From IMG/VR virus record IMGVR_UViG_3300049846_001037, positions 1-64,000 of that record: a stretch of DNA of 64,000 bases. One strand, written 5' to 3'. The translations under genes and the position numbers were made by a program. This document shows positions 3,161-60,522 of this stretch, one piece after another; the first letter of the stretch is position 1, and each line of letters opens with the position of its first letter. The notes under the pieces are model-generated. The model made no database searches and had not been told where the DNA came from. It saw only the letters and a program-made list of their open reading frames with translations.

Positions 3161-3832
3161 TTAGAGCCCTATGAAGCATTGACTTGTTCCTGCTGGTTTT
3201 ACTACAAAACCGTGGTAGGCAAAGTTTGTAGATACGCTTGGATCTTCAATCATCGTATAAGATCCGCCAGTAGCAACAACCCTATATGATGTAGCTAATG
3301 TAACGTTTGTTGCTGCAGCACCACCCTCAGTACCTGTCTCAACTATCTGAGACTGGTTTACACCAGGAACAATCGCAGTACCAGCATTGTTATTCCTTAT
3401 AGAAAAAGCATCATACAACAATGTGTTCTTTACAGTTGGTGTTAGGGTTCCAGTAACCACAACAATGGTCGTTCCGCTGATTTGAAACAACGGCAACTCT
3501 ATTGGGTCCGAGGTCGCTACCCCATACATATCAAAGGCGGCGATAGCTGTTTTCGAGGAGGCTGCCAAAGTTGCAACAACATTGTTAGAACCAGTTGGTG
3601 GGTTGACCATATACCAAGATTCAACCCTTATGAGAGTGCTATTGTTGGTGCCAGTAATGTACGTTAGGTTGTTACCGCCGTAGGTTACGCTAATACCTGT
3701 AGATGTAGCCGTCCTAATTCCCAAGCTAACCAATAAAAGTTTGTTAGTGCCAGTTGGGTTTACAGTGTGGGCATACGTAACAGAACTGGCATTGAACTGA
3801 GTTGCAGTATTATTTCCAGTAGTTATAGGCAT
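3161..3832 (-). CDS. Putative fibre-tip/adhesin beta-sandwich protein (NPPTGSNNVV family)
   Basis: Shares LLLVS..SVTYGG..W.M.NPPTGSNNVV with 3832-4446 and with both halves of 15789-17066. Confidence 0.5.
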   Translation of the reverse strand: MPITTGNNTATQFNASSVTYAHTVNPTGTNKLLLVSLGIRTATSTGISVTYGGNNLTYITGTNNSTLIRVESWYMVNPPTGSNNVVATLAASSKTAIAAFDMYGVATSDPIELPLFQISGTTIVVVTGTLTPTVKNTLLYDAFSIRNNNAGTAIVPGVNQSQIVETGTEGGAAATNVTLATSYRVVATGGSYTMIEDPSVSTNFAYHGFVVKPAGTSQCFIGL

Positions 3833-4446
3833 TACTCGCCCTCCAGTCCAACTATCACTATTCCCCAGTCCGATTGCTCGCTCAGAGTATTTTCAACGTT
3901 TAGCCTATCAAACAACATGGCTATCTGAGCTGATATAGCTTCACACCTGAAACCATTGTGAGTTAAGTCCCACTCAATTCTCTGTGCGCCGAAAAGATTA
4001 TTGACATAGGAATTTGTGTTGTTAACGGCACCAATTCCAATGGTAATGCTGTTTGGTTTTGAAAAAGATGAGACACCAATCTGTGTAACCTGCTTTCCAG
4101 CTCCAGAATTGGTTCTATAGACTGGTGATGTCTGCTTGATACCATTATACACAGAGCAAAACACCGCCGCAGAAATGGAGGAGTCTGTATTTATGGAGAT
4201 GGTATGATCTCCAATCAATGGCGACTCTAACCCCCAGACCTCCATTCTCAAATTGGTTTCTATCTGAGCAACATTAATCAACGACATTTGCTGCGAACCA
4301 CATGATATAGAAGTTATTTCTTGATCTATGTCTGGGACAAAGCATACGCTAACCATCAAAAATGGGTTAGTTCCAGAAACATTACATGTTCCAGAAATGA
4401 CGGAACCTTCTCCGCTAAATACAGATGTGTTAGGTAGAGATATCAT
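3832..4446 (-). CDS. Putative fibre-tip protein, paralog of 3161-3832
   Basis: GTNPFLMVSV...RMEVWGLESPLIGDHTISI matches the family pattern; directly follows fibre 4448-7642. Confidence 0.5.
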   Translation of the reverse strand: MISLPNTSVFSGEGSVISGTCNVSGTNPFLMVSVCFVPDIDQEITSISCGSQQMSLINVAQIETNLRMEVWGLESPLIGDHTISINTDSSISAAVFCSVYNGIKQTSPVYRTNSGAGKQVTQIGVSSFSKPNSITIGIGAVNNTNSYVNNLFGAQRIEWDLTHNGFRCEAISAQIAMLFDRLNVENTLSEQSDWGIVIVGLEGE

Positions 4447-4447
4447 A

Positions 4448-7400
4448 TTAGTTCATGTAAAGCATCAATGATGCTTTGGTGACGTTGGTTGGGGTTGCAT
4501 CAATGTGGAACGTGAGAATGTCGCCAGCCGTTATACCAGACCATGTAGTTATTGATGTATCGGTGTTCTTTGATACTGATGACAATGTTGGTTTCTCTGT
4601 ACCAACAATAGACGAGTTTCCTAGAACCAAGCTGGCTTGAGACCAGTTGGCATAGGTTGTTCTTCTTACGTCTACAGAAAGAGTTCCTGTAACGTCTGCT
4701 ACCAGTACCCACTGATTCAAAGTGCATGTGAATGGAACCGTGACAAAACCTTGTGTTCCAGAGGAAAGAACTGATCCAGCGCCGTCCATGTTGAAGTTGA
4801 TCATTCTCTGGAGAGAACCGGCAGAGCTTCCTGAAATTGTAATGCCCTGACCAGCGGTGCCTGTAGATATTGTGATGATTCCAGCTCCGGCAATTGTGTT
4901 AAAGTTTAAGGAGTTGCCAGTCTTGCTTATGAATAGAGCGGTGCCATTTCCTGAGTTGTTGACGTTTGTCACAACTGCACTGCCAGATAAGTTCAATACG
5001 TTTAGGGCATTGATGGTTGGAGCAACAATAGAGGTTGTTCCAGATATTGTTGAACCAGTGAAGTTGGTGGTATTGAGTGTCGTGATAGTAGCCAACGGAG
5101 ATGTTAGAGAGGTAAGGGCAGTTAAGCTTCCTCCAACTATGGCTGTGGTTCCAGATATATTTGATCCAGTAATGTTGGTTGCATTTATGGTCGTAATGGT
5201 TGCAAGCGGCGATGTTAAGTTAGTAAGGGCTCCAACGGTTCCAGCAACCAAAGATGTGGTTCCAGATATTGTGTTTCCAGTAATATTTGTAGCACTGATA
5301 GTCGTAATAGTGGCCATCGGGCTTGTCATTGATGTTGTATTTGTCAATGTCTGAGCATTAATGGTTGAACCAGAAATGCTTGTTCCAGTCAATGTTGTGA
5401 AAAATGCTCCGTCAGCAGATGTTAACGGACCACTCAAGTTCAGCGCATTGGCATTAAGTGTGGTGCCAGAAATGGTTGTTCCAGTAATGCTCGATGCCGT
5501 CAGCGTAGTTACCGAAGCCAATGGGGTTGTGATTGATGTAAAACCATTGACTGTGGATCCAACGACAGATGTGCCGCTTACTGTTGAACCAATGACACTA
5601 GTAGCATTTACCAATGGTGAGGTAACGGAGGTAAAACCATTGACTGTTCCTGCCACTAAAGCCGTTCCACTGATGTTCGTACCAGTTATGTTCGTAGCAT
5701 TTAGGGTAGTTACAGTAGCCAAAGGAGAGGCTACTGATGTAAAGCCGTTGATGGTGCCAGCTACCAAGGCAGTACCACTTATGTTGGTGCCAGTGATATT
5801 TGTAGCATTGAGAGTTGTTACACTGGCTAATGGTGATGTGACAGAGGTAAAGCTATTGACTGTTCCACCTATGACTGATGCTCCAGTAAAGGTCGTTGCG
5901 CTGAGGGTGGCTACTCCAGCCATGTTTGAAGATGGATCAATGGTGATGGTAGTGTTTAGTAGACCACCACCGCTTGTTCCAGACCAAATTGCAATACCAG
6001 AATTATTGGTGGTTGCTGGAGTCGTTATTGAAGATCCAGGACCAGTTGAGCTGCCTGATATGGTGATCAAATTTGCGTTTGTAGTAATCGTAACACTTCC
6101 TGCACCAGCAAGAGTGTTGAAATTCAAGTCATTGCTAGTCTTTGTTCCAGCAAAAACAGACTGTCCACCGCCGAGGTTACTGCCACTGACGATGACATCA
6201 TTTCCAGACTGCCTGATCACTGTTCCAGTCAAAAGATTGGCTCCAACGGTTGCTCCAAAAACAGACGTAAAGCCGTTGACTGTTCCTGCCACTAGGGTAG
6301 TTCCACTGATGTTAGTTCCAGTTATGTTGGTGGCATTAAGTGTTGTGACCGTGGCTAAAGGAGAGGTGACAGAGGTGAATCCGTTGACGGTTGATCCAAC
6401 AACAGAGGTACCACTTATGGTTGAGCCAATGACGTTGGTGGCATTTACTAGTGGGGAGGTTACGGACGTAAATCCGTTGACAGTTCCAGCAACTAGAGCA
6501 GTTCCACTGATATTCGTGCCAGTGATGTTCGTGGCATTAAGGGTAGTTACAGTAGCCAGTGGCGTGGAGACTGACGTGAATCCATTTACAGTACCTGCAA
6601 CCAGAGCAGTGCCGCTGATATTTGTGCCGGTGATACTCGTAGCATTTAGTGTGGTGACATTGGCTAGGGGTGTAGTAATTGATGTAAAGCCACTGACTGT
6701 GCCTGCAACTAGAGTAGTTCCACTAATGTTAGTACCAGTGATATTGGTAGCATTGAGGGTGGTGACACTTGCTAGGGGCGTAGTAACTGATGTGAAGCCG
6801 TTGACGGTGGATCCAACAACAGAAGTGCCACTTACTGTTGAACCAATGACACTTGTGGCGTTTACCAATGGAGATGTAACGGATGTAAAGCCATTGATAG
6901 TGCCAGCCACCAAGGCCGTGCCGCTTATGTTGGTCCCAGTGATGTTTGTGGCATTCAATGTTGTAGTAGTTGCCAACGGCGTTGATAGAGATGTGAAAGC
7001 GTTGACCGTTCCACCAATGACCGAGTTACCAGTAAAGGTGGTAGCAGAAATGGCTGCTGCCCCATTGATATTAGAATTTGGATCAATGGTGATTGTGGTA
7101 TTGAGTAGTCCTGCTCCCGTGGTGCCAGACCAAACAGCAATGCCTGAGTTGTTGGTTGTTGTAGGGGCTGTGATGGTCGAAGCCGCAACCGAAGAACCAG
7201 AAATAGTCAAAACATTGGCAGTCGAAGAAAGAGAGATGCTTCCGACTCCAGATATTTGCTTAAACTGCAAATTATTCAATGACTTAGAGCTGAAAATTGG
7301 CTCACCAGCGCCAAGATTTGTTGCGTTCACAATGACGGCATTACCAGACAGATTCAACACATTCAAGGCATTGACAGTAGGAGCAGTCAATGAACCAGAT

Positions 7401-7642
7401 ATGGTTGTGCCTGTTAGGCTTGTAAAGCTTGCAGATTGCCCACTAAGTCCAGACTCTATGACTAGGCTTCCGCTAACGTTTCCACCATAGACTGATAGGT
7501 ATGGAAGATTGGTGGCGCTGGATGTTCCGCTAAGGTTGGTCTGTATCTGACCAGAATTTGACAAAGTGACTTCGTATGGCAAGCCATCTTGGCTTGTCAA
7601 GAAGATTTGGGTTCCAGAATCGAATACGTATTGGACTGTCAT
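4448..7642 (-). CDS. Long tail fibre protein, Thr/Ser/Gly-rich repeats
   Basis: 1064 aa with 31- and 36-aa tandem repeats, three N.G.G..F..K....L.F modules, and a C-terminal domain shared with 17606-20368. Confidence 0.75.
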   Translation of the reverse strand: MTVQYVFDSGTQIFLTSQDGLPYEVTLSNSGQIQTNLSGTSSATNLPYLSVYGGNVSGSLVIESGLSGQSASFTSLTGTTISGSLTAPTVNALNVLNLSGNAVIVNATNLGAGEPIFSSKSLNNLQFKQISGVGSISLSSTANVLTISGSSVAASTITAPTTTNNSGIAVWSGTTGAGLLNTTITIDPNSNINGAAAISATTFTGNSVIGGTVNAFTSLSTPLATTTTLNATNITGTNISGTALVAGTINGFTSVTSPLVNATSVIGSTVSGTSVVGSTVNGFTSVTTPLASVTTLNATNITGTNISGTTLVAGTVSGFTSITTPLANVTTLNATSITGTNISGTALVAGTVNGFTSVSTPLATVTTLNATNITGTNISGTALVAGTVNGFTSVTSPLVNATNVIGSTISGTSVVGSTVNGFTSVTSPLATVTTLNATNITGTNISGTTLVAGTVNGFTSVFGATVGANLLTGTVIRQSGNDVIVSGSNLGGGQSVFAGTKTSNDLNFNTLAGAGSVTITTNANLITISGSSTGPGSSITTPATTNNSGIAIWSGTSGGGLLNTTITIDPSSNMAGVATLSATTFTGASVIGGTVNSFTSVTSPLASVTTLNATNITGTNISGTALVAGTINGFTSVASPLATVTTLNATNITGTNISGTALVAGTVNGFTSVTSPLVNATSVIGSTVSGTSVVGSTVNGFTSITTPLASVTTLTASSITGTTISGTTLNANALNLSGPLTSADGAFFTTLTGTSISGSTINAQTLTNTTSMTSPMATITTISATNITGNTISGTTSLVAGTVGALTNLTSPLATITTINATNITGSNISGTTAIVGGSLTALTSLTSPLATITTLNTTNFTGSTISGTTSIVAPTINALNVLNLSGSAVVTNVNNSGNGTALFISKTGNSLNFNTIAGAGIITISTGTAGQGITISGSSAGSLQRMINFNMDGAGSVLSSGTQGFVTVPFTCTLNQWVLVADVTGTLSVDVRRTTYANWSQASLVLGNSSIVGTEKPTLSSVSKNTDTSITTWSGITAGDILTFHIDATPTNVTKASLMLYMN
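5450..7030 (-). repeat. Coding tandem repeats (NGFTSVTSPLATVTTLNATNITGTNISGTALVAGTV and a 31-aa variant), in two blocks
   Basis: Visible in the translation; DNA copies diverge at synonymous sites. Boundaries approximate. Confidence 0.85.
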
Positions 7643-7654: not shown

Positions 7655-10600
7655 TTAGAATATCCTGTGTATAGTAGCCCTTATTGAAGGCCTTGTTGTT
7701 GCATTGGCTCCAACTGGCGCTATTTGTGCTGCCGTTGTAGTTGCCGTCATTTGGAACTTGATGGTAGATCCACCAGTTACATTGACAAGGAATTGATTGC
7801 CAACTTCCGAGAACACGCTATTGGCTGTCAGTGTTGCGCCAACTTGACTTCCAGCTACCTCAGCGCCATCTTTAACGGCTCTTATTTCAATGGTTGAGGC
7901 TGGCGTAGATGTTCTGTTGACTGTTGCTGTGAAGTTCACCGCATAGACACCACCAACCGTGCCAGTAAACAATGTTCCTCCCGCCGTGTGAGTCCAGCCA
8001 TCCAGCAAGACATTGGTGTTAAAAGTGATATCTTGGAATGAATTAGCCACGCTGACTGTCTGGGTTGTTGTGTCGTAAGAATAGGCATAGCCTCTTGCGT
8101 TGACGCCAGATATCTCGTTAGCGAACAAGACGTTGACAGTTGAGGAAACAGATCCAATATTGCTTGTGCCAGAGTTGTTGACGACAATGTTGGCACCACT
8201 TCCCAGTGTCAGCGATGCATTTGCTGTTAGGGTGTTCCCTGTGATCGAGGTAATGTTTGCCACCTGACCAAGTATTGCTGTTCCAGAAATAGTCGTTCCA
8301 GTAATACCACCAAAGGAAGCAACCTGACCCAAGAACGAGGTTCCAGAAATCGTATTGCCAGTGATAGACGTTATGCTGGCAACTTGACCCAAGAATGATG
8401 TTCCTGAGATGATGTTTCCAGTAATCGATGTGATGTTGGCAGTTTGACCAAGTATTGAGACGCCAGAAATGCTTGTCGTTCCGGTGATGGTAGCGAACTT
8501 GGCGCTGGTGCCATTCAATCCACCAGTCATTGCATCGCCAGTGATATGAACAAACGAACCAGTAGCCACCAACTGGAATCTATTCCAATCAGTTGAGGTC
8601 AAGTAGCCATCAGTAGTCGATGTAGACTGACCAATACCAATAGTGCTGCCAGTTACTAGGATTGGGGCTGTACCAGTGATGATTATGTTCGACGTAGAGC
8701 CAGATATAGTCAGAACATTGGCTGTTGAAGATAACGTGACAGATCCAATGCCAGATATTTGCTTAAACTCCAACGTGTTCAGGTTCTTGCCAGAGAATAT
8801 TGGCTCACCAGAACCAAGGTTGCTGCCGTTTGTGACTACAGCACTACCAGACAGATTAAGCGTATCGATGGCGTTGATGTTTTTTGCTACCAGCGTATTG
8901 CCACTGATGCTTGTGCCAGTCAGGTTCGTTGCATTGAGCGTTGTAATGGTTGCAAGCGGAGACGTTAACGATGTCGTATTTGTTATCGTTTGGGCATTGA
9001 TGGTTGAGCCAGTAATGAGCGTGACGCCAGTGATGTTGGTGAAGACCGCAGTTGTACCAGTGAATATTTGACCGCCGACAACTGGAGAGAACGATGAGGT
9101 TAGAGCATTTATCGTTCCACCAACAACTGATGTAGTTCCAGATATGGTGTTGCCAGTCAAACTCGTGGCATTAATGGTGGTAGCTGTGATAAGCGGAGAA
9201 GTCAACGATGTTGTATTGGTTATCGTTTGAGCGTTGACGCTTGATCCGGTGATGTTGGTGCCAGTGATGTTGGTGAATACTGCCGTTGTGCCAGTGTGAA
9301 TCTGTCCACCAACAACGGGTGAGAATGATGATGTTAGAGCGGTTACTGTGCCGCCAACAATGGTGGTTCCACTTATGCTGGTTCCAGTGATGCTCGTGAA
9401 GTTGGCGGAAGTTCCACTCAAACCACCAGTCATGATACCACCAGCGGTATTTAGAGGGACATAGCTCGTGGCGTGATTGTGGTCGCTTCTAGCAAAACTG
9501 TTAGCTATACCACCATCATTGACAGTGTTGGTTAGATCAATGGTCGATGGCGTGGAGGTTGTGAGTGGATCAGCGCCATTAGGAAGATGTCTTGATGCAT
9601 GCCCAGATGGAACAATACCACCAACAAGGTTAACATTAGTGATGCTGTTTCCACCCATATCCAAACCACCAGTCATGGCTCTTGTGCCGTTAACTAGGAG
9701 GTATTGGGTATGGTCGTCACTTAGAAGACCCAACAATTGGTTGTGGTATGTAATACCACCGCCTCCCACAACCGATGTAGCCTTATAGGATGGCGTTGGT
9801 CTTGTGTCTTCTATTTCAATAATAGTTCCAGAGCCTTGCTGAACTATGATATCAGCAATGTGAATGATTGCATCTTTGAAGTATTCTGGTTGAGTTGGGG
9901 ATGCTGCAAGACTGGCTCCAGAAAAGCTTACATACTCGCTTTGAGCATACAAGAATAGCAAGACATCTGCACCGCCAGCATACCACATGGCATGTTTGGC
10001 GTAGTATCCAGATGTCATTGCGGTCAAGCCGCTGCTGTTGAGATCAATTTGTGTATTATTGATTTGACCAGTCAGGTTATAGTTACCGCTCCAAACTATG
10101 CCAGTACCTGCGACCGTATGGTATATTTCAGCAAAAGCAATTGGGTTTGTCTTTGGGGCTGGTTCGTACTTGTGAGTAGAGTAGTAATACTCTCCTCCGG
10201 TCATATCAAAATAGAGTCCAGATGGATTTGATATGACAAGACCATTAGAGACAATGCCACCAAAGACATCTCTTAGATACTCATCAACCTTGTTTCCAAA
10301 GTGATGGGCATCCATGCTGATATTGCCAACCGAAGTAACATAGGTTTCATTGGCTACAACTCTTCCAAGCAATATCTTTGTTACATCACCATTAATAGCG
10401 GAGGATGACTTGGAGATGTTACCATTAGCATCAACAAAGACATAGACATCATCCCAGGCTGCAATACCTGTATATGTCTGGGTTGGCCAGGTTTGTTTAA
10501 TCAGAACATCATTTGACTCAAGATATCCTATGCCAGCATTTACCTTAACAGCCAAACCAGAGCTTGCTGGCAACTGCACCATGGTTCCACTGGTTATCAA

Positions 10601-13549
10601 TCCCATTGTGGATCCGTCTTTCCAAAGCTGGGCTACCTCAGCTAGAGAGGACTGAGTTGGTCCGGCATAGTATGCGCCCACCGAGAAGGTGGAGAAGTCT
10701 TCTGGGTCTCCAGCAAGAGTTGTAACCAAAGGTGATGCAATGTTTGTCTTTTTTCTTGCAAATGTTCCCTGAAGTGATCCATAGCTTGTGGGATGCTCAA
10801 TAGAAACATCATATCCGTTGGCTATCAATGTCAGAGCATTTGCAATGAGCTGTGTTGGACCACCAGTATTGGGATTAGAGATACCGGTAGAGAATCCATC
10901 AATGAATGTATTCAACAATCTGACTTCTGAATTATTGTAGGCCGTAATAGCTGTCGAACCCGTAACTGCTGGGTAAGGTGGGTTCTGGATGATGGTATTG
11001 TCGGCCTGGAAGAAGTTTCCAGAACCATTGATGACAGCAAACCTTGTCAGTCCACCATAGACATCCGAGAACAATGAGTCCTGAACATGAATGGCATTCT
11101 GAGAACCAGAGTTCAAAACATCATTATTGATCGTGAAAGCCTGCTTGATATTGCTCAATGGAAGTGATGTTAAATTGAAGCAAGCCAAGTAGTTGGAGTT
11201 ATTGTTCTCAGGTGTTAGTTGAGCTACACCCCATGTTGCGCCAAGGTAAACCCTATACATGGACATGTAACCATTGCTTCCAGGTTCATACCAATTCAAT
11301 AGGTATGAGCCATGATCAGTGGTGCCCATGAGGGTTAAGTCTGTAAGGCTTGCTGTGGTTGTTCCGCTAAAGAGGTGCTGACCTGGGAAAGCTGCATTGA
11401 TGATGGTCGTTGAAGCATTTTCACCTCTAACGGTGACGTATGGCTTTAACGATATTGGGTTTAACTCAGTAAAGACACCAGGACCAACTTCAATGACGTA
11501 TTGGGATGTGGGACCATTGTCGGTGATAGCAGCAAGAGCAGCTTTGACGCTGGTGAAATCACCACCCTTTTGTGCAACCGTTATTATATGCTGATCTTTG
11601 TTAGCTAAGAAGAATGGTGCATTGGGGTTGATGTCATTCTTTAGATATGGAGAATAGGCAGAGAGAAATCCAGTTGCTCCTGATGATTGGACTGAGATGT
11701 TGTAAGTGTTCTCATTAAATGCAACTGCATAGCCCCTGAGGTTTGGAGCTGACCCATCCTCTGGTATGGATATACCTGTAGCCCAGTTCGAAATACCAAG
11801 AACAGGCAAGCTTACTCTAGCTCCATCCAATATCTCTAGACCCTTACCAGTTCCGTCAACTCCGATCAAAGCCGATGCTCTTGTTGTGAGGAACAAGCCT
11901 GAGCCAGATGCAACGACGCCAATGGGTGGATTGGATGCGCCTGCTATGACGTAGAAGTTCTCACAAGATACTTCTAGTGGAGTTCCGCTAACAGAAATAA
12001 ACTCAAAACCATGATCAGATGTGTTATCTTGCGTTGTGTCAGCATATTCAAAGTAGAACACGTTGGTCGTGCCGCTATTAGCAATAACCCTAGCTGCGCC
12101 GTGGCAGTTCTCAAAAGCAACCTTGTGAATGAGCGTAAAGTCACCAGGATTGGTCGAAACAAGACCATGATATCCCACTGGAACATTTTGAATGGTGAGG
12201 AAAGAGAGGGTAGTTGATTGCCCAATGTGGAAAAGGTCGTTTGATCCAGTTGGTTGTATTCTGACGGCATATTGGTCTTCACCCTGTACATATGTAAACT
12301 CTGGTACGGTTAGCTGGGGCTCGGAGTATATGCCAGGACCAACAAGAATCAAGTATCCATGATCTGCAGTAGGAGGATCAAGGTTGGTGTTGATGTAGTC
12401 AATGGCCTGATAGATGTGTTGGAAGTCCCCACCCTTCTGTGAAACTGTAACAGCATGATCCTTGCGGTACGTCATGAAGAACGTATTTGCTTCACTAATA
12501 AATTGTTTATCTAACGGAGTATAGGATATCATGTAACCCGTAGCACCAGAGCTCTGTATATACACGTCATATCCGGTGTTAAGGTTAAATGGAGTTGAGT
12601 TAAGGACTATGTTTGGGGAGCCCTCGTCCTGAGGCACATAGACACCTGTAGCCCAGTTTGAGATGCCCAATACTCCAGCATTAATATTGGCTCCGCTTTC
12701 GGTTACAACAGCATATCCAGTACCGTCAACACCCTCCATTGCGGCGGCTTTAGTTGATACGGTTAGACCAGAACCTACGGCATGTACGCCATAGTCTGGA
12801 TTTGTTACATCGCCATAGGTATAGAAGTTTTCACAAGAAACATAGCACTGAGATCCACTGACTGCTGTAAATCTGAATCCAGTTTGACCAGCATTGGCTG
12901 TGGCATCAACATACTCAAGGTAAAGTGTATTGATGTTTCCAGTATCGCAGTAAGAGTCAATGCCGTAGAAGCAGCCAGCAAATGAGACCTTATGGAGTAG
13001 ACCATACTGGTCTACATTGTTGATCTTTAGTCCAGCGTAGCCTGGATTGGAGTTCTCAATGGACATGAAGCCGATTGAGAACGGACCATTAGCCTCAAAG
13101 GTATGTCCAGTGCCTGTTGATACAACCGTAACTGCGTACTGGTCAAGACCAAGGATATGCACGTCTGTAGGAATAACGATGTCGTCTTCTTCGTATCTGC
13201 CAGGATAGACAAGCACAACCCAAGGCTCAAGAGGCGTTGGCATTTGAGTTGCAGCATAAGCGGCAGCATCTTTGATCGATGAGAACTGTCCTTGTCCTGG
13301 GTTCTTCTGGACGATAGCGGTTTTGGCCGGGCTGAGGCGTGGGTCATTGACTAGAACATTGAAGACGCCACTGCTGTCAACCGTGACAACTTGCGACCAA
13401 GCATTGCCAGATCCAAAATAGTGGAAACCGCCACCGTCTTCCCTGAGTGCTAGGGAGCCAGTAGGTGCAATAGAATTACCAGTCGTAGGAACTGCATCTA
13501 CGTCTAGGATGTGAACTTGGTTGACTGTTATTCTGCCTTGGTCGCTCAT
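7655..13549 (-). CDS. Giant tail fibre/tailspike: three pectin-lyase-like beta-helix modules, a stalk, and a C-terminal C1q/BclA-like domain
   Basis: Three copies of the beta-helix cap motif (e.g. TVAQKGGDFTSVKAAL...IEVGPGVFTE). C-terminal YAYSYDTTTQTV...ITFNT...GVYAVNF is C1q/BclA-like. Confidence 0.7.
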   Translation of the reverse strand: MSDQGRITVNQVHILDVDAVPTTGNSIAPTGSLALREDGGGFHYFGSGNAWSQVVTVDSSGVFNVLVNDPRLSPAKTAIVQKNPGQGQFSSIKDAAAYAATQMPTPLEPWVVLVYPGRYEEDDIVIPTDVHILGLDQYAVTVVSTGTGHTFEANGPFSIGFMSIENSNPGYAGLKINNVDQYGLLHKVSFAGCFYGIDSYCDTGNINTLYLEYVDATANAGQTGFRFTAVSGSQCYVSCENFYTYGDVTNPDYGVHAVGSGLTVSTKAAAMEGVDGTGYAVVTESGANINAGVLGISNWATGVYVPQDEGSPNIVLNSTPFNLNTGYDVYIQSSGATGYMISYTPLDKQFISEANTFFMTYRKDHAVTVSQKGGDFQHIYQAIDYINTNLDPPTADHGYLILVGPGIYSEPQLTVPEFTYVQGEDQYAVRIQPTGSNDLFHIGQSTTLSFLTIQNVPVGYHGLVSTNPGDFTLIHKVAFENCHGAARVIANSGTTNVFYFEYADTTQDNTSDHGFEFISVSGTPLEVSCENFYVIAGASNPPIGVVASGSGLFLTTRASALIGVDGTGKGLEILDGARVSLPVLGISNWATGISIPEDGSAPNLRGYAVAFNENTYNISVQSSGATGFLSAYSPYLKNDINPNAPFFLANKDQHIITVAQKGGDFTSVKAALAAITDNGPTSQYVIEVGPGVFTELNPISLKPYVTVRGENASTTIINAAFPGQHLFSGTTTASLTDLTLMGTTDHGSYLLNWYEPGSNGYMSMYRVYLGATWGVAQLTPENNNSNYLACFNLTSLPLSNIKQAFTINNDVLNSGSQNAIHVQDSLFSDVYGGLTRFAVINGSGNFFQADNTIIQNPPYPAVTGSTAITAYNNSEVRLLNTFIDGFSTGISNPNTGGPTQLIANALTLIANGYDVSIEHPTSYGSLQGTFARKKTNIASPLVTTLAGDPEDFSTFSVGAYYAGPTQSSLAEVAQLWKDGSTMGLITSGTMVQLPASSGLAVKVNAGIGYLESNDVLIKQTWPTQTYTGIAAWDDVYVFVDANGNISKSSSAINGDVTKILLGRVVANETYVTSVGNISMDAHHFGNKVDEYLRDVFGGIVSNGLVISNPSGLYFDMTGGEYYYSTHKYEPAPKTNPIAFAEIYHTVAGTGIVWSGNYNLTGQINNTQIDLNSSGLTAMTSGYYAKHAMWYAGGADVLLFLYAQSEYVSFSGASLAASPTQPEYFKDAIIHIADIIVQQGSGTIIEIEDTRPTPSYKATSVVGGGGITYHNQLLGLLSDDHTQYLLVNGTRAMTGGLDMGGNSITNVNLVGGIVPSGHASRHLPNGADPLTTSTPSTIDLTNTVNDGGIANSFARSDHNHATSYVPLNTAGGIMTGGLSGTSANFTSITGTSISGTTIVGGTVTALTSSFSPVVGGQIHTGTTAVFTNITGTNITGSSVNAQTITNTTSLTSPLITATTINATSLTGNTISGTTSVVGGTINALTSSFSPVVGGQIFTGTTAVFTNITGVTLITGSTINAQTITNTTSLTSPLATITTLNATNLTGTSISGNTLVAKNINAIDTLNLSGSAVVTNGSNLGSGEPIFSGKNLNTLEFKQISGIGSVTLSSTANVLTISGSTSNIIITGTAPILVTGSTIGIGQSTSTTDGYLTSTDWNRFQLVATGSFVHITGDAMTGGLNGTSAKFATITGTTSISGVSILGQTANITSITGNIISGTSFLGQVASITSITGNTISGTSFLGQVASFGGITGTTISGTAILGQVANITSITGNTLTANASLTLGSGANIVVNNSGTSNIGSVSSTVNVLFANEISGVNARGYAYSYDTTTQTVSVANSFQDITFNTNVLLDGWTHTAGGTLFTGTVGGVYAVNFTATVNRTSTPASTIEIRAVKDGAEVAGSQVGATLTANSVFSEVGNQFLVNVTGGSTIKFQMTATTTAAQIAPVGANATTRPSIRATIHRIF

Positions 13550-55386: not shown

Positions 55387-55387
55387 C

Positions 55388-56601: not shown

Positions 56602-56991
56602 TTATCTAAACCCGAATCTTAGTCTGATCTCCTTGATCTTTGTTGATGGAACCCATCCTACATCGTTCTCGGCATAGTCAACTCCCACTTCTCCCCTGAG
56701 AGCCTTAAAGAACTTAAAGTAGGCCATTTCGGCATCAGCCATACTTTGCAAATCCTCTGTGGTAAACTTGCCGGGCGCTGGCTCAGAAAAACCACAAGAC
56801 GAAAGAACGGAAGCCAAAAGATCTTTTACATTCCCCTTTGCCTCTGGTTTATCACACTCTAAAGTGGAAAGGTCAACAGAGGCATGGAATGGGCCAGCAT
56901 TAGCGGGTCTACCCATACGACACTTGACAGAGCAATTTGACTGAGATATCTCAAGTGTCCTAAAGAGATCGGCTTGTCTATAGCTTATCAT
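56602..56991 (-). CDS. Orphan protein with MISYRQADL leader
   Basis: 129 aa; ATGA overlap with the upstream gene. Confidence 0.65.
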   Translation of the reverse strand: MISYRQADLFRTLEISQSNCSVKCRMGRPANAGPFHASVDLSTLECDKPEAKGNVKDLLASVLSSCGFSEPAPGKFTTEDLQSMADAEMAYFKFFKALRGEVGVDYAENDVGWVPSTKIKEIRLRFGFR

Positions 56992-57905
56992 ATCAAAAAG
57001 TTATACTGAGATGTGCCTAGGTAACGGAAGTTAGACGAAGAAGCGCTGGCAAAGGCAGAGTCAACGTCAATGTCGTAGGCAGTCTTGTATACCTTGTTAT
57101 CCTGCTGAGTTCCCTCAACCAACAATACGTATGTTCCTGGGTTGGCTGTCATCGTGAAGGTTCCACTGACATTTGTGTATGCAATCTCTATTGCATCGGC
57201 TGTGGTTAGAGTTCTAGCACCCTTCTCAAATAGTGAAATTCTCATGCCAGACAAACCAACACCATACTCAGTTGTGTAAGTATCAGAAATTACAAGTGAT
57301 CCATTGTTGACCTGAACAAGCGTAATGTCACCGAAGTTGAATGTTGGGTTGCCGCTTGGAACTGTTTTAGCCACCGTATTGGACAGGTATCCAGAGGCGC
57401 TATAGGTGGCATAGTAGTCACCTGGATTGAGATAGACCGTGTAAAGGCCACTGACAGTCACGGTAGAAGCAACCACGTTGTTGGTGCCACCAAAGGCAGC
57501 AATTGAAACCGCAGCATTGTTGATGCCCGATCCACTCGTGTTGATGACGTTGCCAGAGACGATGACTGATCCAGGTATGTTAACAGAAGCACCCGAAAGC
57601 AAGGGAAGAACACTGAACGAATCAGTGTACTCTAGCGAGTTGCCGCTGTACATGGCTCTGTAGTCAACAACTCTGTTTGTTATCGTGGCGTTAGGTGAAA
57701 CTGAATAGAGATAATAGAATCTATTGAGGTTGTCTGGATCTTGAGTCATTGTTCCAGAGGTAACATCAAAAACCTTAGTGCCAGCACCGATATAGTAGTA
57801 GACATCAAGCGATGCGCCAGACACACCAACGTTGATGGGGTTTCCATCGGCGTCTAGGAAGTTGGCAAAAAGTGTTACTTGAGTTCCTTGGAAGAAGTCT
57901 GACAT
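56988..57905 (-). CDS. Virion protein with tandem Ig-like/carboxypeptidase-regulatory-like domains
   Basis: VSGNV....G.GI..A.V...GLYTV.LNPGDY....SASGY, repeated; SG-rich. Confidence 0.65.
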   Translation of the reverse strand: MSDFFQGTQVTLFANFLDADGNPINVGVSGASLDVYYYIGAGTKVFDVTSGTMTQDPDNLNRFYYLYSVSPNATITNRVVDYRAMYSGNSLEYTDSFSVLPLLSGASVNIPGSVIVSGNVINTSGSGINNAAVSIAAFGGTNNVVASTVTVSGLYTVYLNPGDYYATYSASGYLSNTVAKTVPSGNPTFNFGDITLVQVNNGSLVISDTYTTEYGVGLSGMRISLFEKGARTLTTADAIEIAYTNVSGTFTMTANPGTYVLLVEGTQQDNKVYKTAYDIDVDSAFASASSSNFRYLGTSQYNFLI

Positions 57906-57914: not shown

Positions 57915-59132
57915 TTAGAATATGAATTTCGTCTGGAGTTTCTTGCCGTTAATATCAACGATGTAGTGTCCTTTGTTCCATGCGGTTCCCTCAACGGCCC
58001 TGATGGTTCCAAATAGGTGTATCTTATCTGCGTCTACCAGCATGCTGTATATGGTCGGCGGCTGAAATGATTGAAACGGTGTTGGTGGAATGTAGTAAAT
58101 GGTAGACCAATTGCTGAGTTGAATGAAGTCTCCAACTGGGTTTCCACTTGTATCAAACGCAGCAAAGCTATGTCTCGGCACCCTACTCTGAGCTCCGCTT
58201 ATGTTTTTGACATCCGTGAACATTCCACATATATAAACCCTATCATTATTGAATATCATCTGAAAAATCCTATTGTCACCAATGAACTGATTTTTCATGA
58301 TACTAAAGTTTGGGGTCGTAATGGCAGCACCGGTGATGTAGTTTGTAGCTAAGGGAGAATAGTTACTCATTGATAATCCAGCTATCGTTGCGCCTTGTCC
58401 AGCAGAAACATACACTCTTGAATTGTTGTAAAAAACAAAGTCTGGTTGAGTGTTTGCAGAAACAGTCCAAGAGTATTGGGTTATGGAGCTTGGATTTGAA
58501 ACATTGAACGACTGCAAATACGTTGGGTAAATGAATGTACTAACATAAAGAATGCTAGTCGAAGGATTGAGGCTCATAGAGAGTATTCTTCCAGATATAT
58601 AGTTCGTCGGCGTTGAAGTGGGCGACATCTGGTAAAAATACGAGGTTAAATTTGTTAGGTTCACACCTATAAAATGGTAAATGTTAGTAGAGCCATTATA
58701 CAGAATGAACATGCCTCCAGCCCAAACCGTGTTGGTGTTGCTGTCATACTCAAGACAAGATATGACTGGAAATGGCATTGCAGATGCAACTATTGAGTAT
58801 TGGTTCTCAGGTAACAGTGCTGTAAATGTGTCTGTTGAGATTTGATAGAGAGTCATGAAGAGATTTGGTGATCCATCTACCTTCTTGAAAGCACCACCAA
58901 GAACTATCAGATCTCCTGATATCTGCTTGATGACACTGATTTGTCCGTCAAACGTATGCGATATTGGATCAAGGTTTCCAGAAACGAGATCGATGACGGC
59001 AAAATTAGACCTTGGTTGTCCATTAATTGACACAAAGTTACCGCCAAGGAATGCCTTGTCCCCTACTTTAATAGAGGAAAAAACAGACCCTACGATGCCA
59101 TTAATGCCTTTTATGTCCAACTGGTTTATCAT
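57915..59132 (-). CDS. Beta-propeller protein (fibre-associated adhesin candidate)
   Basis: Repeated blades LGGNF..ING..R..FA, LGGAF..VDG, AGGMF, ICGMF. Start moved to ATG 59132 (TAAT-ATG). Confidence 0.6.
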   Translation of the reverse strand: MINQLDIKGINGIVGSVFSSIKVGDKAFLGGNFVSINGQPRSNFAVIDLVSGNLDPISHTFDGQISVIKQISGDLIVLGGAFKKVDGSPNLFMTLYQISTDTFTALLPENQYSIVASAMPFPVISCLEYDSNTNTVWAGGMFILYNGSTNIYHFIGVNLTNLTSYFYQMSPTSTPTNYISGRILSMSLNPSTSILYVSTFIYPTYLQSFNVSNPSSITQYSWTVSANTQPDFVFYNNSRVYVSAGQGATIAGLSMSNYSPLATNYITGAAITTPNFSIMKNQFIGDNRIFQMIFNNDRVYICGMFTDVKNISGAQSRVPRHSFAAFDTSGNPVGDFIQLSNWSTIYYIPPTPFQSFQPPTIYSMLVDADKIHLFGTIRAVEGTAWNKGHYIVDINGKKLQTKFIF

Positions 59133-59133
59133 A

Positions 59134-60522
59134 TTAGTAGATGTAGAATCCCGCAACTGGAGCTGTTGTTGGTGCATACATGCTTCCAGTTAAGAACAAC
59201 GATGTTCCAGATATGACATACTGTGTTGCTGGAAGAATCAATATGCCGCTAACAAAAATCATTGCACTTGTGGGGGCGTTGGCGAAGTAGAAGTGCTTGT
59301 TCACTCCGTCAGTAGTTCCCGTCAATGATTCATTGAAAATGAAGTTTGTTGGAGTTCTATCATTGATGGTTTTGACATAGAGATTTGCAAATGGAGTTCC
59401 CGAAGCACCAATGTTTCCTACTCCAGAAACGGAGGTGGAAATGTTTGAGCCGCTTTCAAGAACTATGCTTGCATTTCCACTGAATGTAAGGTCTCCAAAG
59501 ATGTCCGAACCAGACTTGGCTACTATGGCATTGAGGTCTAGTCCACTTACACCTACGAGATTGTTTGCATAGATGGTATCCACAGGATTGGATAGGCTAC
59601 CTATGGATATGCCTGAGCTAAACTCAAGATCAGAAAGCACCGTAATTGGAGACATGCCAGTGATGTTGGTTGCGTGGAGCGTTTTGGTATAGATGTCGCC
59701 AAATGGATTTGTGTCGTCGCCAATCTGGTTTATGCCAGATACAGAGTTTAGAATGGACGCACCACTTCCAAAGGTAAGGTTTCCACTCATGGTGGAACCA
59801 CTGGTTGAAACTAGTCCGTTTAGAGATGAGATACCTGTTCCAGACGAAATGACACTATTTGCATAGATGGTGCTGTAGTATACTCCCGTGGTTCCAATGT
59901 CAAACACATTGTCTAGCTCAGGAACAAAGTTTCCGCTAACAAGTATGTAGCCCTGCGAAGCTAATCTAAGCAAGCCAGAGCCTTCAAGATTTGCATATAG
60001 ACCAGTGATTCCAACTGCATATGAAGATATACCTACCGAGAAACCACCTATTTGATATGAGAAACTGGAAATATTGCGGGCAAACACGCTCTCAGTTACG
60101 CTTCCGTTTGATGATATGGTGGAGTTTCCAGACATCACCCAATTCAACCCAGAAGAAACTACATCGGTGATATTAAGGGTTGCGCCAGACTCTATGGTAA
60201 GTGGTCCTGTAACCGTGTCGCCAGTTATGTGGACAAATGCAGAAGCACCAAAGGATGTTCCTGTGGTTAAGAACTGAAGCCTCTCAGCGACATCGTTGAA
60301 ATTACCAGCAGGATCAGTTCCCAACACTCTCTCTATCTGATCAAGAACAGTGTAAGCAACGTTTACATCATAGGCTACAACCTTGTTTCCCGACTGAGTG
60401 ACAACGCCATTGCTATCCCTGATCTCATCCAACACATAGAGAAGTGTTGAATTGGTACCAGAGCCGCTAGGATTAAGATCGAAGTCACTAGGATAGTTGC
60501 TTGTTCCAGTGATGTATGCCAT
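59134..60522 (-). CDS. Head/neck fibre protein
   Basis: N-terminal SNYP..FD...N.....QIE..LGT.P.G....V..RL anchor-like segment; same stalk and C-terminal motifs as the tail fibres, but located in the head module. Confidence 0.6.
   Translation of the reverse strand: MAYITGTSNYPSDFDLNPSGSGTNSTLLYVLDEIRDSNGVVTQSGNKVVAYDVNVAYTVLDQIERVLGTDPAGNFNDVAERLQFLTTGTSFGASAFVHITGDTVTGPLTIESGATLNITDVVSSGLNWVMSGNSTISSNGSVTESVFARNISSFSYQIGGFSVGISSYAVGITGLYANLEGSGLLRLASQGYILVSGNFVPELDNVFDIGTTGVYYSTIYANSVISSGTGISSLNGLVSTSGSTMSGNLTFGSGASILNSVSGINQIGDDTNPFGDIYTKTLHATNITGMSPITVLSDLEFSSGISIGSLSNPVDTIYANNLVGVSGLDLNAIVAKSGSDIFGDLTFSGNASIVLESGSNISTSVSGVGNIGASGTPFANLYVKTINDRTPTNFIFNESLTGTTDGVNKHFYFANAPTSAMIFVSGILILPATQYVISGTSLFLTGSMYAPTTAPVAGFYIY

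What the first reader, a model, noticed from the sequence alone, without database searches (positions are those of the whole stretch)
3161..60522. Pervasive Ser-Gly/Thr-Gly motif across exterior virion proteins: possible glycosylation sequon
Seen: xSG and xTG recur far beyond the repeat stalks. I count about 22 SG in the 462-aa head fibre (59134-60522), and they are dense in the sheath insertion (VTGTSGYVYPASGTVSG), tail terminator, baseplate J and I, the Ig-like protein 56988-57905, an MCP loop (VTGTPTTGT) and all fibres. They are sparse in the charged orphans (45872-47152, 52197-52751, 53748-54869); the tape measure is intermediate. Known: Ser-Gly is an O-glycosylation acceptor in other systems, and glycosylated phage virions exist. 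Inference: a short motif selected in many non-homologous surface proteins suggests a phage-encoded modification giving a glycan-coated particle. No glycosyltransferase lies in this window.
Basis: partly seen in the sequence, partly recalled or inferred. Interest (0 to 1): 0.6.

Follow-up and report, generated by a model that had tools for sequence, protein, structure and literature searches.

The report
Ser-Gly-rich outer proteins, jumbo phage
The outward-facing tail, fibre and decoration proteins of this uncultured 205-kb freshwater phage carry about twice as many Ser-Gly pairs as chance allows, a trait seen only in its own clade, and because the clade also keeps a four-enzyme glycosyltransferase cluster, sugar attachment to those serines is plausible but unproven.

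Summary
The Ser-Gly (SG) excess is real. The 36 proteins of 3161-60522 hold 362 SG against 188 expected (z about 14), the strongest of all 400 dipeptides. GS is 1.16, NG and DG are depleted, and the rest of the genome is 0.99. TG is not enriched outside the fibres. The excess survives repeat collapsing and removal of the fibres, and it acts on the protein, not the DNA. It is specific to this clade: T4 virion proteins give 1.08 and 55 other myovirus loci have a median of 1.12. The sites are conserved, Ser is replaced mainly by Thr, and they sit at strand ends in a [I/V]-S-G-[T/N/S] context. Sheath, a 391-aa tail protein and a decoration protein share the excess without detectable homology. The true major capsid protein (62588-63574) has no SG.

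The genome does encode glycosyltransferases, outside the window: a GT4-GT4-GT9-GT2 cluster at 132-138 kb. It kept its gene order on the three relatives' contigs I fetched around a GT9 homolog. Two other phages place GT9-like, GT2 and methyltransferase genes beside collagen-like (Gly-X-Ser/Thr)n fibre genes. O-glycosylation of SG serines is my leading explanation (about 0.4). A purely structural turn motif is close behind (about 0.35). Only mass spectrometry can decide.

The parts
4448..7642 (-). Fibre protein, 1064 aa, with repeats of the NITGTNISGT type. SG 40 against 17.0 expected.
   Evidence: (p 1.4e-6). The C-terminal domain matches phrog_10330. It shares modules with the other fibres.
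7655..13549 (-). Giant fibre protein, 1964 aa. SG 39 against 21.6 expected.
13554..15779 (-). Fibre protein, 741 aa. SG 29 against 12.2 expected.
17606..20368 (-). Fibre protein, 920 aa, with repeats of the GLTGTTVSGNSG type. SG 40 against 16.0 expected. Its G001 homologs carry collagen-like (G-X-S/T)n stalks.
21857..27022 (-). Giant fibre protein, 1721 aa. SG 52 against 32.9 expected.
27035..30184 (-). Fibre protein, 1049 aa. SG 34 against 16.2 expected.
   Evidence: Of its 34 SG, 16 are kept as SG in the G001 ortholog.
30243..33305 (-). SG 18 against 7.3 expected. No BLAST similarity to the fibres.
   Evidence: No Pfam or PHROG match.
33307..34914 (-). Baseplate J-like wedge protein. SG 5 against 2.7 expected, a mild excess that is not significant on its own.
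   Evidence: PF04865 E 1.9e-16; phrog_6 E 1.8e-35.
49038..50849 (-). Tail sheath, 603 aa. It has 14 SG, all in residues 59-330 (N-terminal and inserted domains), and none in the conserved C-terminal core.
   Evidence: Family matches. The 39 homologs have 10-29 SG each against 5-8.6 expected, with 23 conserved SG columns. AF2 model with pLDDT 82.9. SG lie in loops touching strands. The fold matches phi812 and CIS sheaths.
51022..52197 (-). 391-aa protein just upstream of the sheath. It is not the capsid protein. It is probably a neck or tail protein of unknown role. SG 7 against 2.1 expected.
   Evidence: Family members have 6-14 SG against 1.3-5.2 expected. The AF2 model is poor (pLDDT 56.8).
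56988..57905 (-). 305-aa beta-sandwich decoration-type protein with a CarboxypepD_reg-like domain. SG 12 against 3.2 expected.
   Evidence: In the family alignment A5, S29-G30 is invariant. In S87-G88, S117-G118 and S247-G248 the Gly is invariant and the Ser is kept in at least 90% of sequences.
59134..60522 (-). SG 22 against 7.7 expected. It shares modules with the tail fibres.
62588..63574 (-). True major capsid protein, 328 aa. It serves as an internal contrast, with SG 0 against 0.7 expected. It holds the VTGTPTTGT loop.
   Evidence: phrog_2522 E 8.5e-75.
39607..43044 (-). 1145-aa tail protein. It serves as a contrast, with SG 1 against 5.4 expected.
48523..49017 (-). Tail tube, 164 aa. 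It serves as a contrast, with SG 0 against 0.6 expected.
   Evidence: Orthologs in relatives match PF26461 Phi812_tail_tube.

Best explanation
The Ser-Gly excess is a real trait at the protein level, and it is under selection. It affects the outward-facing virion parts of one clade of uncultured freshwater jumbo myoviruses: the fibres, the outer domains of the sheath, a baseplate-distal protein, a 391-aa tail protein and a beta-sandwich decoration protein.

My leading explanation is as follows. The serines stand at the exposed end of a beta-strand in the context [V/T/I]-x-[I/V]-S-G-[T/N/S]-x-[I/L/V]. They serve as acceptors for O-glycosylation in the host cytoplasm. The enzymes would be the phage's own soluble glycosyltransferases, the conserved GT4-GT4-GT9-GT2 cluster at 132.4-138.1 kb of the same genome. 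Assembled particles would then carry short glycans on their fibres, sheath and decoration proteins.

Shown here: the enrichment, its clade specificity, its conservation, its sequence context, and the presence and synteny of the transferases. Inferred: that these enzymes act on these serines. The sugar and its function (for example shielding, stability or adhesion) are unknown.
For: 1. Size and specificity of the signal.
- SG 362 against 188 expected, z about 14. GS 1.16, NG 0.75, DG 0.90, so this is not a generic x-Gly turn effect.
- [IV]SG[TNS] occurs 79 times against 8.8 expected.

2. The selection acts on the protein, not the DNA.
- The Ser codon skew before Gly is a general NNT|GGN codon-pair effect seen for all amino acids and all genes.
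- The SG hexamers are enriched only in frame 0 of the structural genes.

3. It is clade-specific.
- T4 virion proteins give 1.08.
- 55 distinct myovirus loci have a median of 1.12 and a maximum of 1.51.
- The relatives G001, L019, L095 and L096 give 1.5-2.0.

4. It recurs in unrelated families.
- Sheath, the 391-aa protein and the beta-sandwich protein each carry about 2.4-3.7 times the expected SG in this phage. Their homologs show the same excess.
- They show no profile-profile similarity (hhalign probability below 1%).

5. The hydroxyl group appears to be what is conserved.
- At 23 conserved SG columns of the sheath, Ser is replaced by Thr 84 times, Gly 32, Ala 31, Asn 10 and Asp 10.
- Between G000 and G001, 52 of 109 SG are kept as SG, while other Ser residues are 35% conserved.

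6. Topology.
- All sheath SG lie in the non-core domains, in loops abutting strands.
- The alternating hydrophobic pattern before the Ser puts its side chain on the outward face (this is an inference).

7. The enzymes.
- The genome has five glycosyltransferases.
- The SbcC-GT4-GT4-x-GT9-(GT2)-nuclease-sigma-RNR order is kept in three relatives. One of them lies on the same 364-kb contig as a sheath ortholog. One is expanded with further transferases, methyltransferases and sugar dehydratases or epimerases.
- GT9 was found in only 2 of 52 other myovirus records whose sheath loci show no or only mild SG excess: 1 of the 50, and G005 but not G003.

8. Gene neighbourhood in other phages.
- In G001 a collagen-like fibre (SGFSGYSGPTGT repeats, 60 SG in 350 aa) lies one gene away from GT9, GT2-methyltransferase and GT4-GT2 genes, inside the structural module.
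- In the distant phage L029 (sheath 28% identical) a QSGYSGYTG collagen-like fibre is followed directly by GT2-methyltransferase-GT17 and GT2-GT9-like genes.
- Such stalks occur in no other of the 1832 ORFs screened.

9. Precedent.
- The GT9-related enzyme TibC heptosylates serines in loops of a beta-helix, for example Ser-313 in N-S-G-G (PMC4358343).
- Phage virion glycosylation is known (described in PMC12619734; PMC5852040).

10. Other targets look less likely.
- No thymidylate-synthase-family hydroxymethylase was found, so the usual route to glycosylated DNA is missing.
- No Bac_transf or WecA-type initiating transferase was found.
Against: - There is no chemical evidence of any modification.
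- The SG sites are old, conserved positions at strand boundaries. In the sheath the excess lies in mid- and high-frequency columns, not in recent gains.
- At least one site (S117-G118 of 56988-57905) corresponds, in my reading from memory of the family consensus, to the usual strand-start Ser/Thr-Gly motif of the CarboxypepD_reg fold. That motif also exists in proteins not known to be glycosylated.
- The capsid protein and the tail tube are the glycosylated proteins in mycobacteriophages, and here they have no SG.
- In this genome the transferase cluster sits among replication and repair genes, not among virion genes.
- Three other relatives show no transferase within 10 kb upstream of the sheath.
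- Two phages with a GT9 gene show no SG excess.
- The GT9 protein is closer to LPS heptosyltransferases than to TibC: 3tov 1.3e-15, WaaF 6.8e-11, TibC 3.2e-5.
- About 70% of the SG sit in paralogous fibre modules.
- Relatedness makes the clade a single evolutionary observation.
Confidence: 0.4

Rival explanations
1. The motif is purely structural. In this clade the outer beta-sandwich and beta-helical domains use Ser-Gly to end or start strands, with Gly taking the turn conformation and Ser capping the backbone. The excess then reflects a lineage-specific building habit and fibre paralogy, and the glycosyltransferases serve something else, such as host envelope modification.
For: - The SG sites are positionally conserved and lie 0-2 residues from strand ends in the sheath model.
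- The flanks alternate hydrophobic and polar residues, as in strand-turn-strand.
- One SG matches, in my reading, the usual first-strand Ser/Thr-Gly motif of the CarboxypepD_reg fold.
- Eight fibre-like proteins share modules.
- There is no excess of recent SG gains in the sheath.
- Helical inner proteins lack the motif.
- The transferase cluster lies in the replication region.
Against: - T4 and 55 other myoviruses also have beta-rich outer domains but show O/E of about 1.1.
- NG and DG, the usual turn pairs, are depleted rather than enriched.
- Ser is replaced by Thr far more often than by the structurally equivalent Asn or Asp.
- Three enriched families show no detectable common ancestry.
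- The rival does not explain why a rare GT9-containing cluster is conserved in the same clade, or why (G-X-S/T)n fibres sit beside transferases in two phages.
Confidence: 0.35
2. The SG serines are selected for another chemistry or property of long-lived extracellular particles. Examples are a different modification of Ser (phosphorylation, acylation) or avoidance of the deamidation-prone Asn-Gly and Asp-Gly pairs at exposed turns, with Ser-Gly as the safe replacement.
For: - NG (0.75) and DG (0.90) are below expectation while SG is high.
- In the sheath family NG is 0.84 and DG 0.63.
- The excess is confined to virion proteins.
Against: - Many control myovirus loci show equally low NG and DG without any SG excess.
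- The SG surplus (+174) is much larger than the NG and DG deficits together (-45).
- I looked for no kinase or acyltransferase linked to the virion genes.
Confidence: 0.1
3. The excess is an artefact of composition, internal repeats or a DNA-level signal.
For: - Ser and Gly are both abundant in these proteins.
- The fibres are repetitive.
- Ser codons before Gly are skewed to TCT.
Against: - Expectations were computed per protein and checked with shuffles.
- The reverse pair GS is only 1.16.
- The excess holds without the fibres (z 6.4), and 301 distinct sites remain after collapsing repeats.
- The codon skew is a general NNT|GGN effect, and the hexamers are enriched only in frame.
Confidence: 0.02

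Closest known systems
Bacterial autotransporter heptosyltransferases (TibC, AAH) acting on TibA and AIDA-I
   Same: - A GT9-type GT-B enzyme works in the cytoplasm and adds sugars to many serines in short loops between strands of a beta-helical surface protein.
- One mapped site is Ser in N-S-G-G (PMC4358343).
- The phage GT9 family is homologous to TibC's catalytic C-lobe (E 3.2e-5).
- It has four invariant C-terminal cysteines, roughly where TibC bears its Cys4 iron finger.
   Different: - The phage enzyme is 314 aa and is too short to hold TibC's N-terminal beta-barrel.
- It scores better against LPS heptosyltransferases.
- The cysteine spacing differs, and HMMER does not align that region.
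- The donor sugar and oligomeric state are unknown.
- The proposed substrates are virion proteins of several folds, not an adjacent autotransporter.
Mycobacteriophage virion glycosylation (Freeman et al. 2023, as described in PMC12619734)
   Same: - Phage-encoded transferases decorate virion proteins with O-linked glycans in the host cytoplasm.
- In the sister phage G001 the transferase genes lie inside the structural module.
   Different: - In mycobacteriophages the glycans sit at the C-termini of the capsid and tail tube subunits. Here those two proteins lack the motif.
- Here the candidate sites are dispersed SG pairs in fibres, sheath and decoration proteins.
- In the window's genome the transferases are about 70 kb from the virion genes.
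BclA-type collagen-like glycoproteins of Bacillus spores (from my own knowledge; related papers listed)
   Same: A (Gly-X-Thr)n collagen-like stalk is O-glycosylated on the residue before each Gly. The transferase and sugar-synthesis genes lie nearby. G001 and L029 show the same layout with (G-X-S/T)n fibres.
   Different: The window itself has no collagen-like repeat. The system is a phage fibre, not a spore nap. No glycan has been demonstrated.
Eukaryotic proteoglycan Ser-Gly xylosylation
   Same: The acceptor dipeptide is Ser-Gly.
   Different: - That motif is flanked by acidic residues, which are depleted around the phage SG (Asp 0.45 at -2 and 0.56 at +2, Glu 0.62 at -1).
- None of the five transferases found here matched a xylosyltransferase family.
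- The resemblance is nominal only.
'Moraphages', large freshwater phages with four core glycosyltransferase groups (PMC12619734)
   Same: They come from freshwater, have genomes of 200 kb or more, carry chaperone genes, have four conserved putative glycosyltransferases, and have predicted Bacteroidota hosts. The GroEL of this phage is nearest to Cytophagales and Planctomycetota at 52-57% identity.
   Different: Membership was not tested. That paper used a family B polymerase as a marker, whereas this genome shows DnaE-type polymerase III domains. The paper does not report an SG excess.

Membership tests
BAHT (TibC/AAH) protein heptosyltransferases | GT9-type GT-B catalytic domain | tested here: met
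   PF01075 E 1.9e-14. The family profile hits TibC at E 3.2e-5, but it hits 3tov (1.3e-15) and WaaF (6.8e-11) better.
BAHT (TibC/AAH) protein heptosyltransferases | N-terminal beta-barrel domain of about 97 residues and a beta-hairpin thumb (dodecamer assembly) | tested here: not met
   The protein is 314 aa. The alignment to LPS heptosyltransferases starts at residue 1-2, which leaves no room for an extra N-terminal domain.
BAHT (TibC/AAH) protein heptosyltransferases | Cys4 iron-finger insertion in the C-lobe | tested here: inconclusive
   Four invariant cysteines (C276, C281, C285, C293) lie in about the corresponding place. The spacing differs from TibC (339, 342, 358, 370) and the region is not aligned by HMMER.
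BAHT (TibC/AAH) protein heptosyltransferases | Gene adjacent to its beta-helical substrate gene | tested here: not met
   In G000 the GT9 gene is flanked by other transferases and by repair genes. A different GT9 gene of G001 does lie one gene from a collagen-like fibre.
BAHT (TibC/AAH) protein heptosyltransferases | Transfers heptose from ADP-heptose to Ser of a protein | not testable with these tools
   This needs an enzyme assay or mass spectrometry.
Phage virion O-glycosylation (mycobacteriophage type) | Phage-encoded glycosyltransferases next to the virion genes | tested here: inconclusive
   Not in G000, where the cluster is at 132-138 kb. Yes in G001 and L029. No in three other relatives within 10 kb.
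Phage virion O-glycosylation (mycobacteriophage type) | Glycans on the capsid and tail tube subunits | not testable with these tools
   The candidate motif is absent from both proteins (SG 0). The chemistry cannot be tested here.
N-linked glycosylation sequon N-x-S/T | Sequon enriched in the target proteins | tested here: not met
   295 observed against 285 expected, O/E 1.03.
Bacteroidota general O-glycosylation | D-(S/T)-(A/I/L/V/M/T) motif enriched | tested here: not met
   66 observed against 65.7 expected, O/E 1.00. That system also acts in the periplasm, not where virions assemble (my own knowledge).
Proteoglycan-type Ser-Gly xylosylation | Acidic residues flanking Ser-Gly | tested here: not met
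   Asp and Glu are depleted at positions -2, -1 and +2 around the SG.
Collagen-like (G-X-S/T)n glycoprotein stalks (BclA type) | Long Gly-X-Y repeat with Ser/Thr at Y, with transferase genes nearby | tested here: not met
   The window has none: the longest G-x-x run is 5 triplets. The feature is met in G001 and L029.
Glycosylated-DNA phages | Thymidylate-synthase-family pyrimidine hydroxymethylase or hydroxylase | tested here: not met
   No PF00303 match in the 205-kb record, which is 90% complete.

The most novel reading that the evidence does not exclude
A clade of freshwater jumbo phages coats its fibres, sheath and decoration proteins with O-glycans. The glycans would be attached in the cytoplasm to serines of a readable sequon, roughly [I/V]-S-G-[T/N/S] at strand ends. 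The enzymes would be a conserved phage GT4-GT4-GT9-GT2 set. Sister phages would extend the system to collagen-like (G-X-S/T)n fibres served by transferases in the structural module. This would be the first sequence-predictable glycan coat covering most outer parts of a tailed phage.
Probability: 0.35. Interest if true: 0.8.

Novelty: new variant of a known kind. Interest (0 to 1): 0.6.

Why it matters
Glycosylation of phage particles has rarely been documented (PMC5852040). The known cases have no simple acceptor motif. If the SG serines are glycosylated, glycosites on phage particles could be predicted from sequence alone. A whole uncultured clade would be shown to shield or functionalise its adsorption apparatus with sugars. 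The many unexplained glycosyltransferases of large phages would gain a testable role, and a GT9-type enzyme would be recruited from LPS synthesis to protein modification a second time. Even if the motif proves purely structural, it is unusual for one dipeptide to be enriched two- to three-fold across unrelated outer domains of a single clade, and that pattern would be useful for recognising such domains.

Tried and rejected
- Cultured relatives. Megablast and tblastn of the sheath region and the neighbouring 391-aa protein against cultured phages found nothing. A single-protein locus search also found nothing, so relatives had to be reached through protein clusters and a profile.
- DNA-level cause: rejected.
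- Repeats and composition: rejected.
- N-x-S/T and the Bacteroidota motif: no enrichment.
- Common descent of the SG-rich domains of sheath, the 391-aa protein and the beta-sandwich protein: hhalign probabilities below 1%.
- Shared late promoter between the virion genes and the transferase cluster: the genes are packed too tightly and there are too few intergenic regions to derive a motif.
- Structure of the 391-aa protein: pLDDT 56.8, too poor to search or map.
- Family-pooled O/E values can mislead. The non-virion GT9 family pools to 2.29 from a few conserved SG. I therefore rely on per-protein counts.
- GT9 presence as a correlate. GT9 was found in 2 of 52 other myovirus records whose sheath loci show no or only mild SG excess, and in both informative enriched genomes. 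The enriched genomes are related, so this counts as one event.
- Host: GroEL gives only flat 52-57% identity to Cytophagales and Planctomycetota, so the host stays unresolved.
- Solvent exposure of the SG serines could not be computed because the tools return no coordinates.
- Complex prediction and read laying were not used. No RNA run holds the phage.
No genetic code other than table 11 was needed.

Full report
**What the window is.**
The window is the first 64 kb of a 205,426-bp IMG/VR virus record that is about 90% complete. It comes from freshwater sediment. Nearly all genes lie on the minus strand. The window holds a myovirus structural module:
- baseplate J (33307-34914) and the tail sheath (49038-50849);
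- the tail tube (48523-49017);
- a chain of giant fibre genes (4448-30184);
- the true major capsid protein at 62588-63574 (phrog_2522, E 8.5e-75).

The phage is far from cultured phages, with no megablast or tblastn hit. I first took the 391-aa protein at 51022-52197 for the capsid protein. It is not, and its role is unknown.

Yes for Ser-Gly. The 36 proteins of 3161-60522 (18,475 aa) contain 362 SG against 188 expected from each protein's own composition. This is the largest deviation among all 400 dipeptides. Within-protein shuffles give 188.7 +/- 11.7, z 14.8.
- The reverse pair GS is the natural control for regional Ser/Gly richness, and it is only 1.16.
- The usual turn pairs NG (0.75) and DG (0.90) are depleted.
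- The 211 ORFs of the rest of the genome give SG 0.99.
- All 11 ORFs with a significant excess lie at 4448-60522.
- Leaving out the seven giant fibre proteins still gives 110 against 64.8, z 6.4.
- Collapsing near-identical repeat contexts leaves 301 distinct sites.

TG is not a partner. It is 1.22 overall and not significant outside the fibres. The quoted 'MCP loop' is a Thr-Gly stretch in a protein that has no SG at all.

**Protein level or DNA level?**
Ser codons before Gly are skewed to TCT and AGT. The same NNT|GGN preference holds for Thr, Ala, Val, Pro, Gly, Leu and Arg, and in non-structural genes as well. The SG-encoding hexamers are enriched only in frame 0 of the structural genes. 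The selection therefore acts on the protein.

**Is it generic to phage tails?**
No.
- Twenty-four T4 virion proteins, including gp34, gp37, gp12, gp18 and Hoc, give SG 77 against 71.2 expected, O/E 1.08.
- A profile of the sheath family fetched 64 myovirus loci of about 20 kb from IMG/VR.
- The 55 distinct loci outside the clade have a median SG O/E of 1.12, an interquartile range of 1.04-1.20 and a maximum of 1.51.
- The two close relatives reach 1.82 and 1.68.
- Further relatives from other collections give 1.5-1.7 around the sheath, against 0.9-1.3 in their replication loci.
- In the 127-kb sister record G001 the structural half gives 2.04, or 1.73 without its collagen-like fibres. The rest gives 1.20.

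**Anatomy of the sites.**
- The context is [V/T/I] at -3, [I/V] at -1, S, G, [T/N/S] at +2 and [I/L/V] at +4. Gly is frequent at -4, -6 and +6. This reads as strand, short turn, strand.
- The alternation puts the Ser side chain on the face opposite the hydrophobic residues. This is an inference.
- [IV]SG[TNS] occurs 79 times against 8.8 expected.
- In a confident sheath model (pLDDT 82.9) all 14 SG lie in loops that abut strands in residues 59-330.
- The conserved C-terminal core (PF17482 region) has none. Its fold matches phi812 and contractile-injection-system sheaths (mapping). That the core forms the inner layer rests on general knowledge of sheath architecture, not on a test made here.

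**Conservation.**
- The 39 sheath homologs (46-77% identity) each carry 10-29 SG against 5-8.6 expected, and they share 23 conserved SG columns.
- Those columns are more conserved than their flanks (0.78 against 0.55).
- Ser is replaced by Thr 84 times, Gly 32, Ala 31, Asn 10 and Asp 10. This points to the hydroxyl group rather than to a generic turn former.
- Between G000 and G001, 52 of 109 SG are retained and 11 become TG. Other Ser residues are 35% conserved and other Gly residues 68%.
- In the beta-sandwich family, S29-G30 is invariant. In three further SG pairs the Gly is invariant and the Ser is kept in at least 90% of sequences.
- One of these pairs matches, in my reading from memory of the family consensus, the usual first-strand Ser/Thr-Gly motif of the CarboxypepD_reg fold. 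That is a point for a structural role.
- The sheath excess lies in mid- and high-frequency columns, not in rare ones. The sites are therefore old rather than still accumulating.

**One family or several?**
The fibres and the 462-aa protein form a network of shared modules. The sheath, the 391-aa protein, the beta-sandwich protein and the 1020-aa baseplate-distal protein have no BLAST similarity to that network or to each other. Profile-profile comparison of the three families with alignments gives probabilities below 1%. The same dipeptide with the same flanks has thus been favoured in at least four or five unrelated lineages of outer proteins of one clade. Inner or helical proteins do not share it: the 1145-aa tail protein has 1 against 5.4, the tube 0 and the capsid protein 0.

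**Glycosyltransferases.**
The window has none, but the genome has five.
- A minus-strand cluster holds GT2 (132.4-133.3 kb), GT9 (133.6-134.5 kb), a 176-aa unknown, GT4 (135.0-136.1 kb) and GT4 (136.8-138.1 kb).
- The cluster lies between a PD-(D/E)XK nuclease, sigma factor and ribonucleotide reductase on one side and SbcC on the other.
- A lone GT4 lies at 91.5-92.6 kb. A mannose-6-phosphate-isomerase-type cupin lies at 110.7 kb.

The GT9 protein defines a family of about 45 metagenomic proteins at 47-77% identity. The gene order SbcC-GT4-GT4-x-GT9-(GT2)-nuclease-sigma-RNR is kept on three relatives' contigs.
- One is the same 364-kb contig that carries a sheath ortholog.
- Another adds GT2, GT4, methyltransferases, a sugar C-methyltransferase and three dehydratase or epimerase genes.

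Variable glycan gene content around a conserved core is what surface-glycan loci usually look like. GT9 is otherwise rare here: it was found in 1 of 50 other myovirus records, plus one 355-kb phage. The genome lacks a thymidylate-synthase-family enzyme, which is the usual entry to glycosylated DNA bases (compare PMC13326640). It also lacks Und-P initiating transferases. Both absences make DNA and self-made envelope polymers less likely targets. Modification of the host LPS core remains possible.

**Neighbourhood evidence from other phages.**
- In G001, three transferases sit inside the structural module on the same strand: GT9, GT2 fused to a methyltransferase, and GT4 fused to GT2. They lie between a fibre pair and the ortholog of 56988-57905.
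- The fibre there is a collagen-like (G-X-S/T)n stalk of SGFSGYSGPTGT units with 60 SG in 350 aa.
- G001 also has a sugar-nucleotide locus at 69-78 kb.
- In L029, a phage whose sheath is only 28% identical, a QSGYSGYTG collagen-like fibre is followed directly by GT2-methyltransferase-GT17 and GT2-GT9-like genes. These lie a few kb from the sheath.
- No other of the 1832 ORFs in my loci has such a stalk.

This repeated pairing resembles the Bacillus BclA arrangement (my own knowledge). It suggests that Ser/Thr before Gly is what such enzymes decorate. It does not prove the same for the dispersed SG of the window, which has no collagen-like repeat.

**Comparison with known systems.**
The nearest mechanistic precedent is the BAHT family. 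TibC has a GT9-like fold and heptosylates many serines in loops of the TibA beta-helix, including Ser-313 in N-S-G-G (PMC4358343).
- The phage GT9 family is homologous to TibC's C-lobe, but it scores better against LPS heptosyltransferases.
- At 314 aa, with its alignment to LPS heptosyltransferases starting at residue 1-2, it has no room for TibC's N-terminal barrel.
- It has four invariant C-terminal cysteines, roughly where TibC has its iron finger, but with different spacing and no alignment.
- I do not file it as a BAHT.

Virion glycosylation itself is known in mycobacteriophages (as described in PMC12619734). Glycoproteins were also detected in the jumbo phage XacN1 (PMC5852040). Neither case involves an SG motif. 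N-x-S/T and the Bacteroidota D-S/T-x motif are not enriched. The flanks are unlike the acidic proteoglycan motif.

**Verdict.**
It remains an inference. I put O-glycosylation of SG serines at about 0.4, a purely structural strand-end motif at about 0.35, other selection on exposed serines or against NG and DG at about 0.1, and artefact at about 0.02. The remainder is for causes not considered here. The decisive test is mass spectrometry of virion proteins, or of fragments co-expressed with the four transferases.

Noticed in passing
window 62588-63574: This is the true major capsid protein (phrog_2522, E 8.5e-75).
   Followed up: yes
whole genome (window and G000 64-205 kb): There is a strong codon-pair bias. 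Before any GGN codon the preceding codon ends in T (about 60-75% in the structural genes and 40-70% in the rest). C is mostly rare there, for example 1-2% for Ser and Pro, although not for Gly. This holds for all amino acids and looks like CpG or CCGG avoidance across codon borders.
   Followed up: partly
G000 132.4-138.1 kb (outside the window; loci L005, L006): A conserved GT2, GT9, 176-aa unknown, GT4, GT4 cluster lies between a PD-(D/E)XK nuclease with sigma factor and RNR on one side and SbcC on the other. The order is kept in relatives L097, L098 and L099. L098 is expanded with methyltransferases and three sugar dehydratase or epimerase genes.
   Followed up: yes
G000 GT9 protein, L005:18562-19503 (-), residues 276-293: Four cysteines (C-x4-C-x3-C-x7-C) are invariant across 33 family members. 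They probably form a metal-binding knuckle, placed about where TibC has its iron finger. I did not test whether ordinary LPS heptosyltransferases share this feature.
   Followed up: partly
L088 (G001) 2-1054 and G001 44449-45393; L029 1-765: These are collagen-like fibre stalks made of Gly-X-Ser/Thr triplets with aromatic X (SGFSGYSGPTGT; QSGYSGYTG). In G001 and L029 they lie beside multi-domain glycosyltransferase and methyltransferase genes within the structural module.
   Followed up: partly
G000 64-171 kb: The phage carries GroEL (101.7-103.3 kb) and GroES, DnaJ, bacterial-type RecA, DnaE-type polymerase III alpha with a PHP domain, peptide deformylase, at least two sigma-70-like factors, an S49 peptidase and two N6/N4 DNA methylases. 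GroEL is nearest to Cytophagales and Planctomycetota at only 52-57% identity, so the host is unresolved.
   Followed up: partly
G000 92.6-93.1 kb (L003:11595-12101, -): A P-loop kinase lies next to the lone GT4 gene. It gives a weak, sub-threshold match to the 5-hmdU DNA kinase family (PF18748, 23 bits against a cut-off of 27). No hydroxymethylase was found, so this is probably a generic P-loop similarity.
   Followed up: no
window 39607-43044: This 1145-aa tail protein is depleted in SG (1 against 5.4 expected) although GS is normal (6). This is the opposite of its neighbours.
   Followed up: no
window 57915-59177 and 59134-60522: The two ORFs overlap by 44 bases. The 420-aa product gives weak beta-propeller matches (Rax2 and DUF5122, below the cut-offs) and a PHROG of unknown function.
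   Followed up: no
L020-L025 (for example G005, a 355-kb phage with terminal repeats): A 730-746-aa homolog of G001's GT2-methyltransferase lies 7-9 kb from the sheath gene on the opposite strand. These phages show no SG excess (O/E 1.12-1.22).
   Followed up: no
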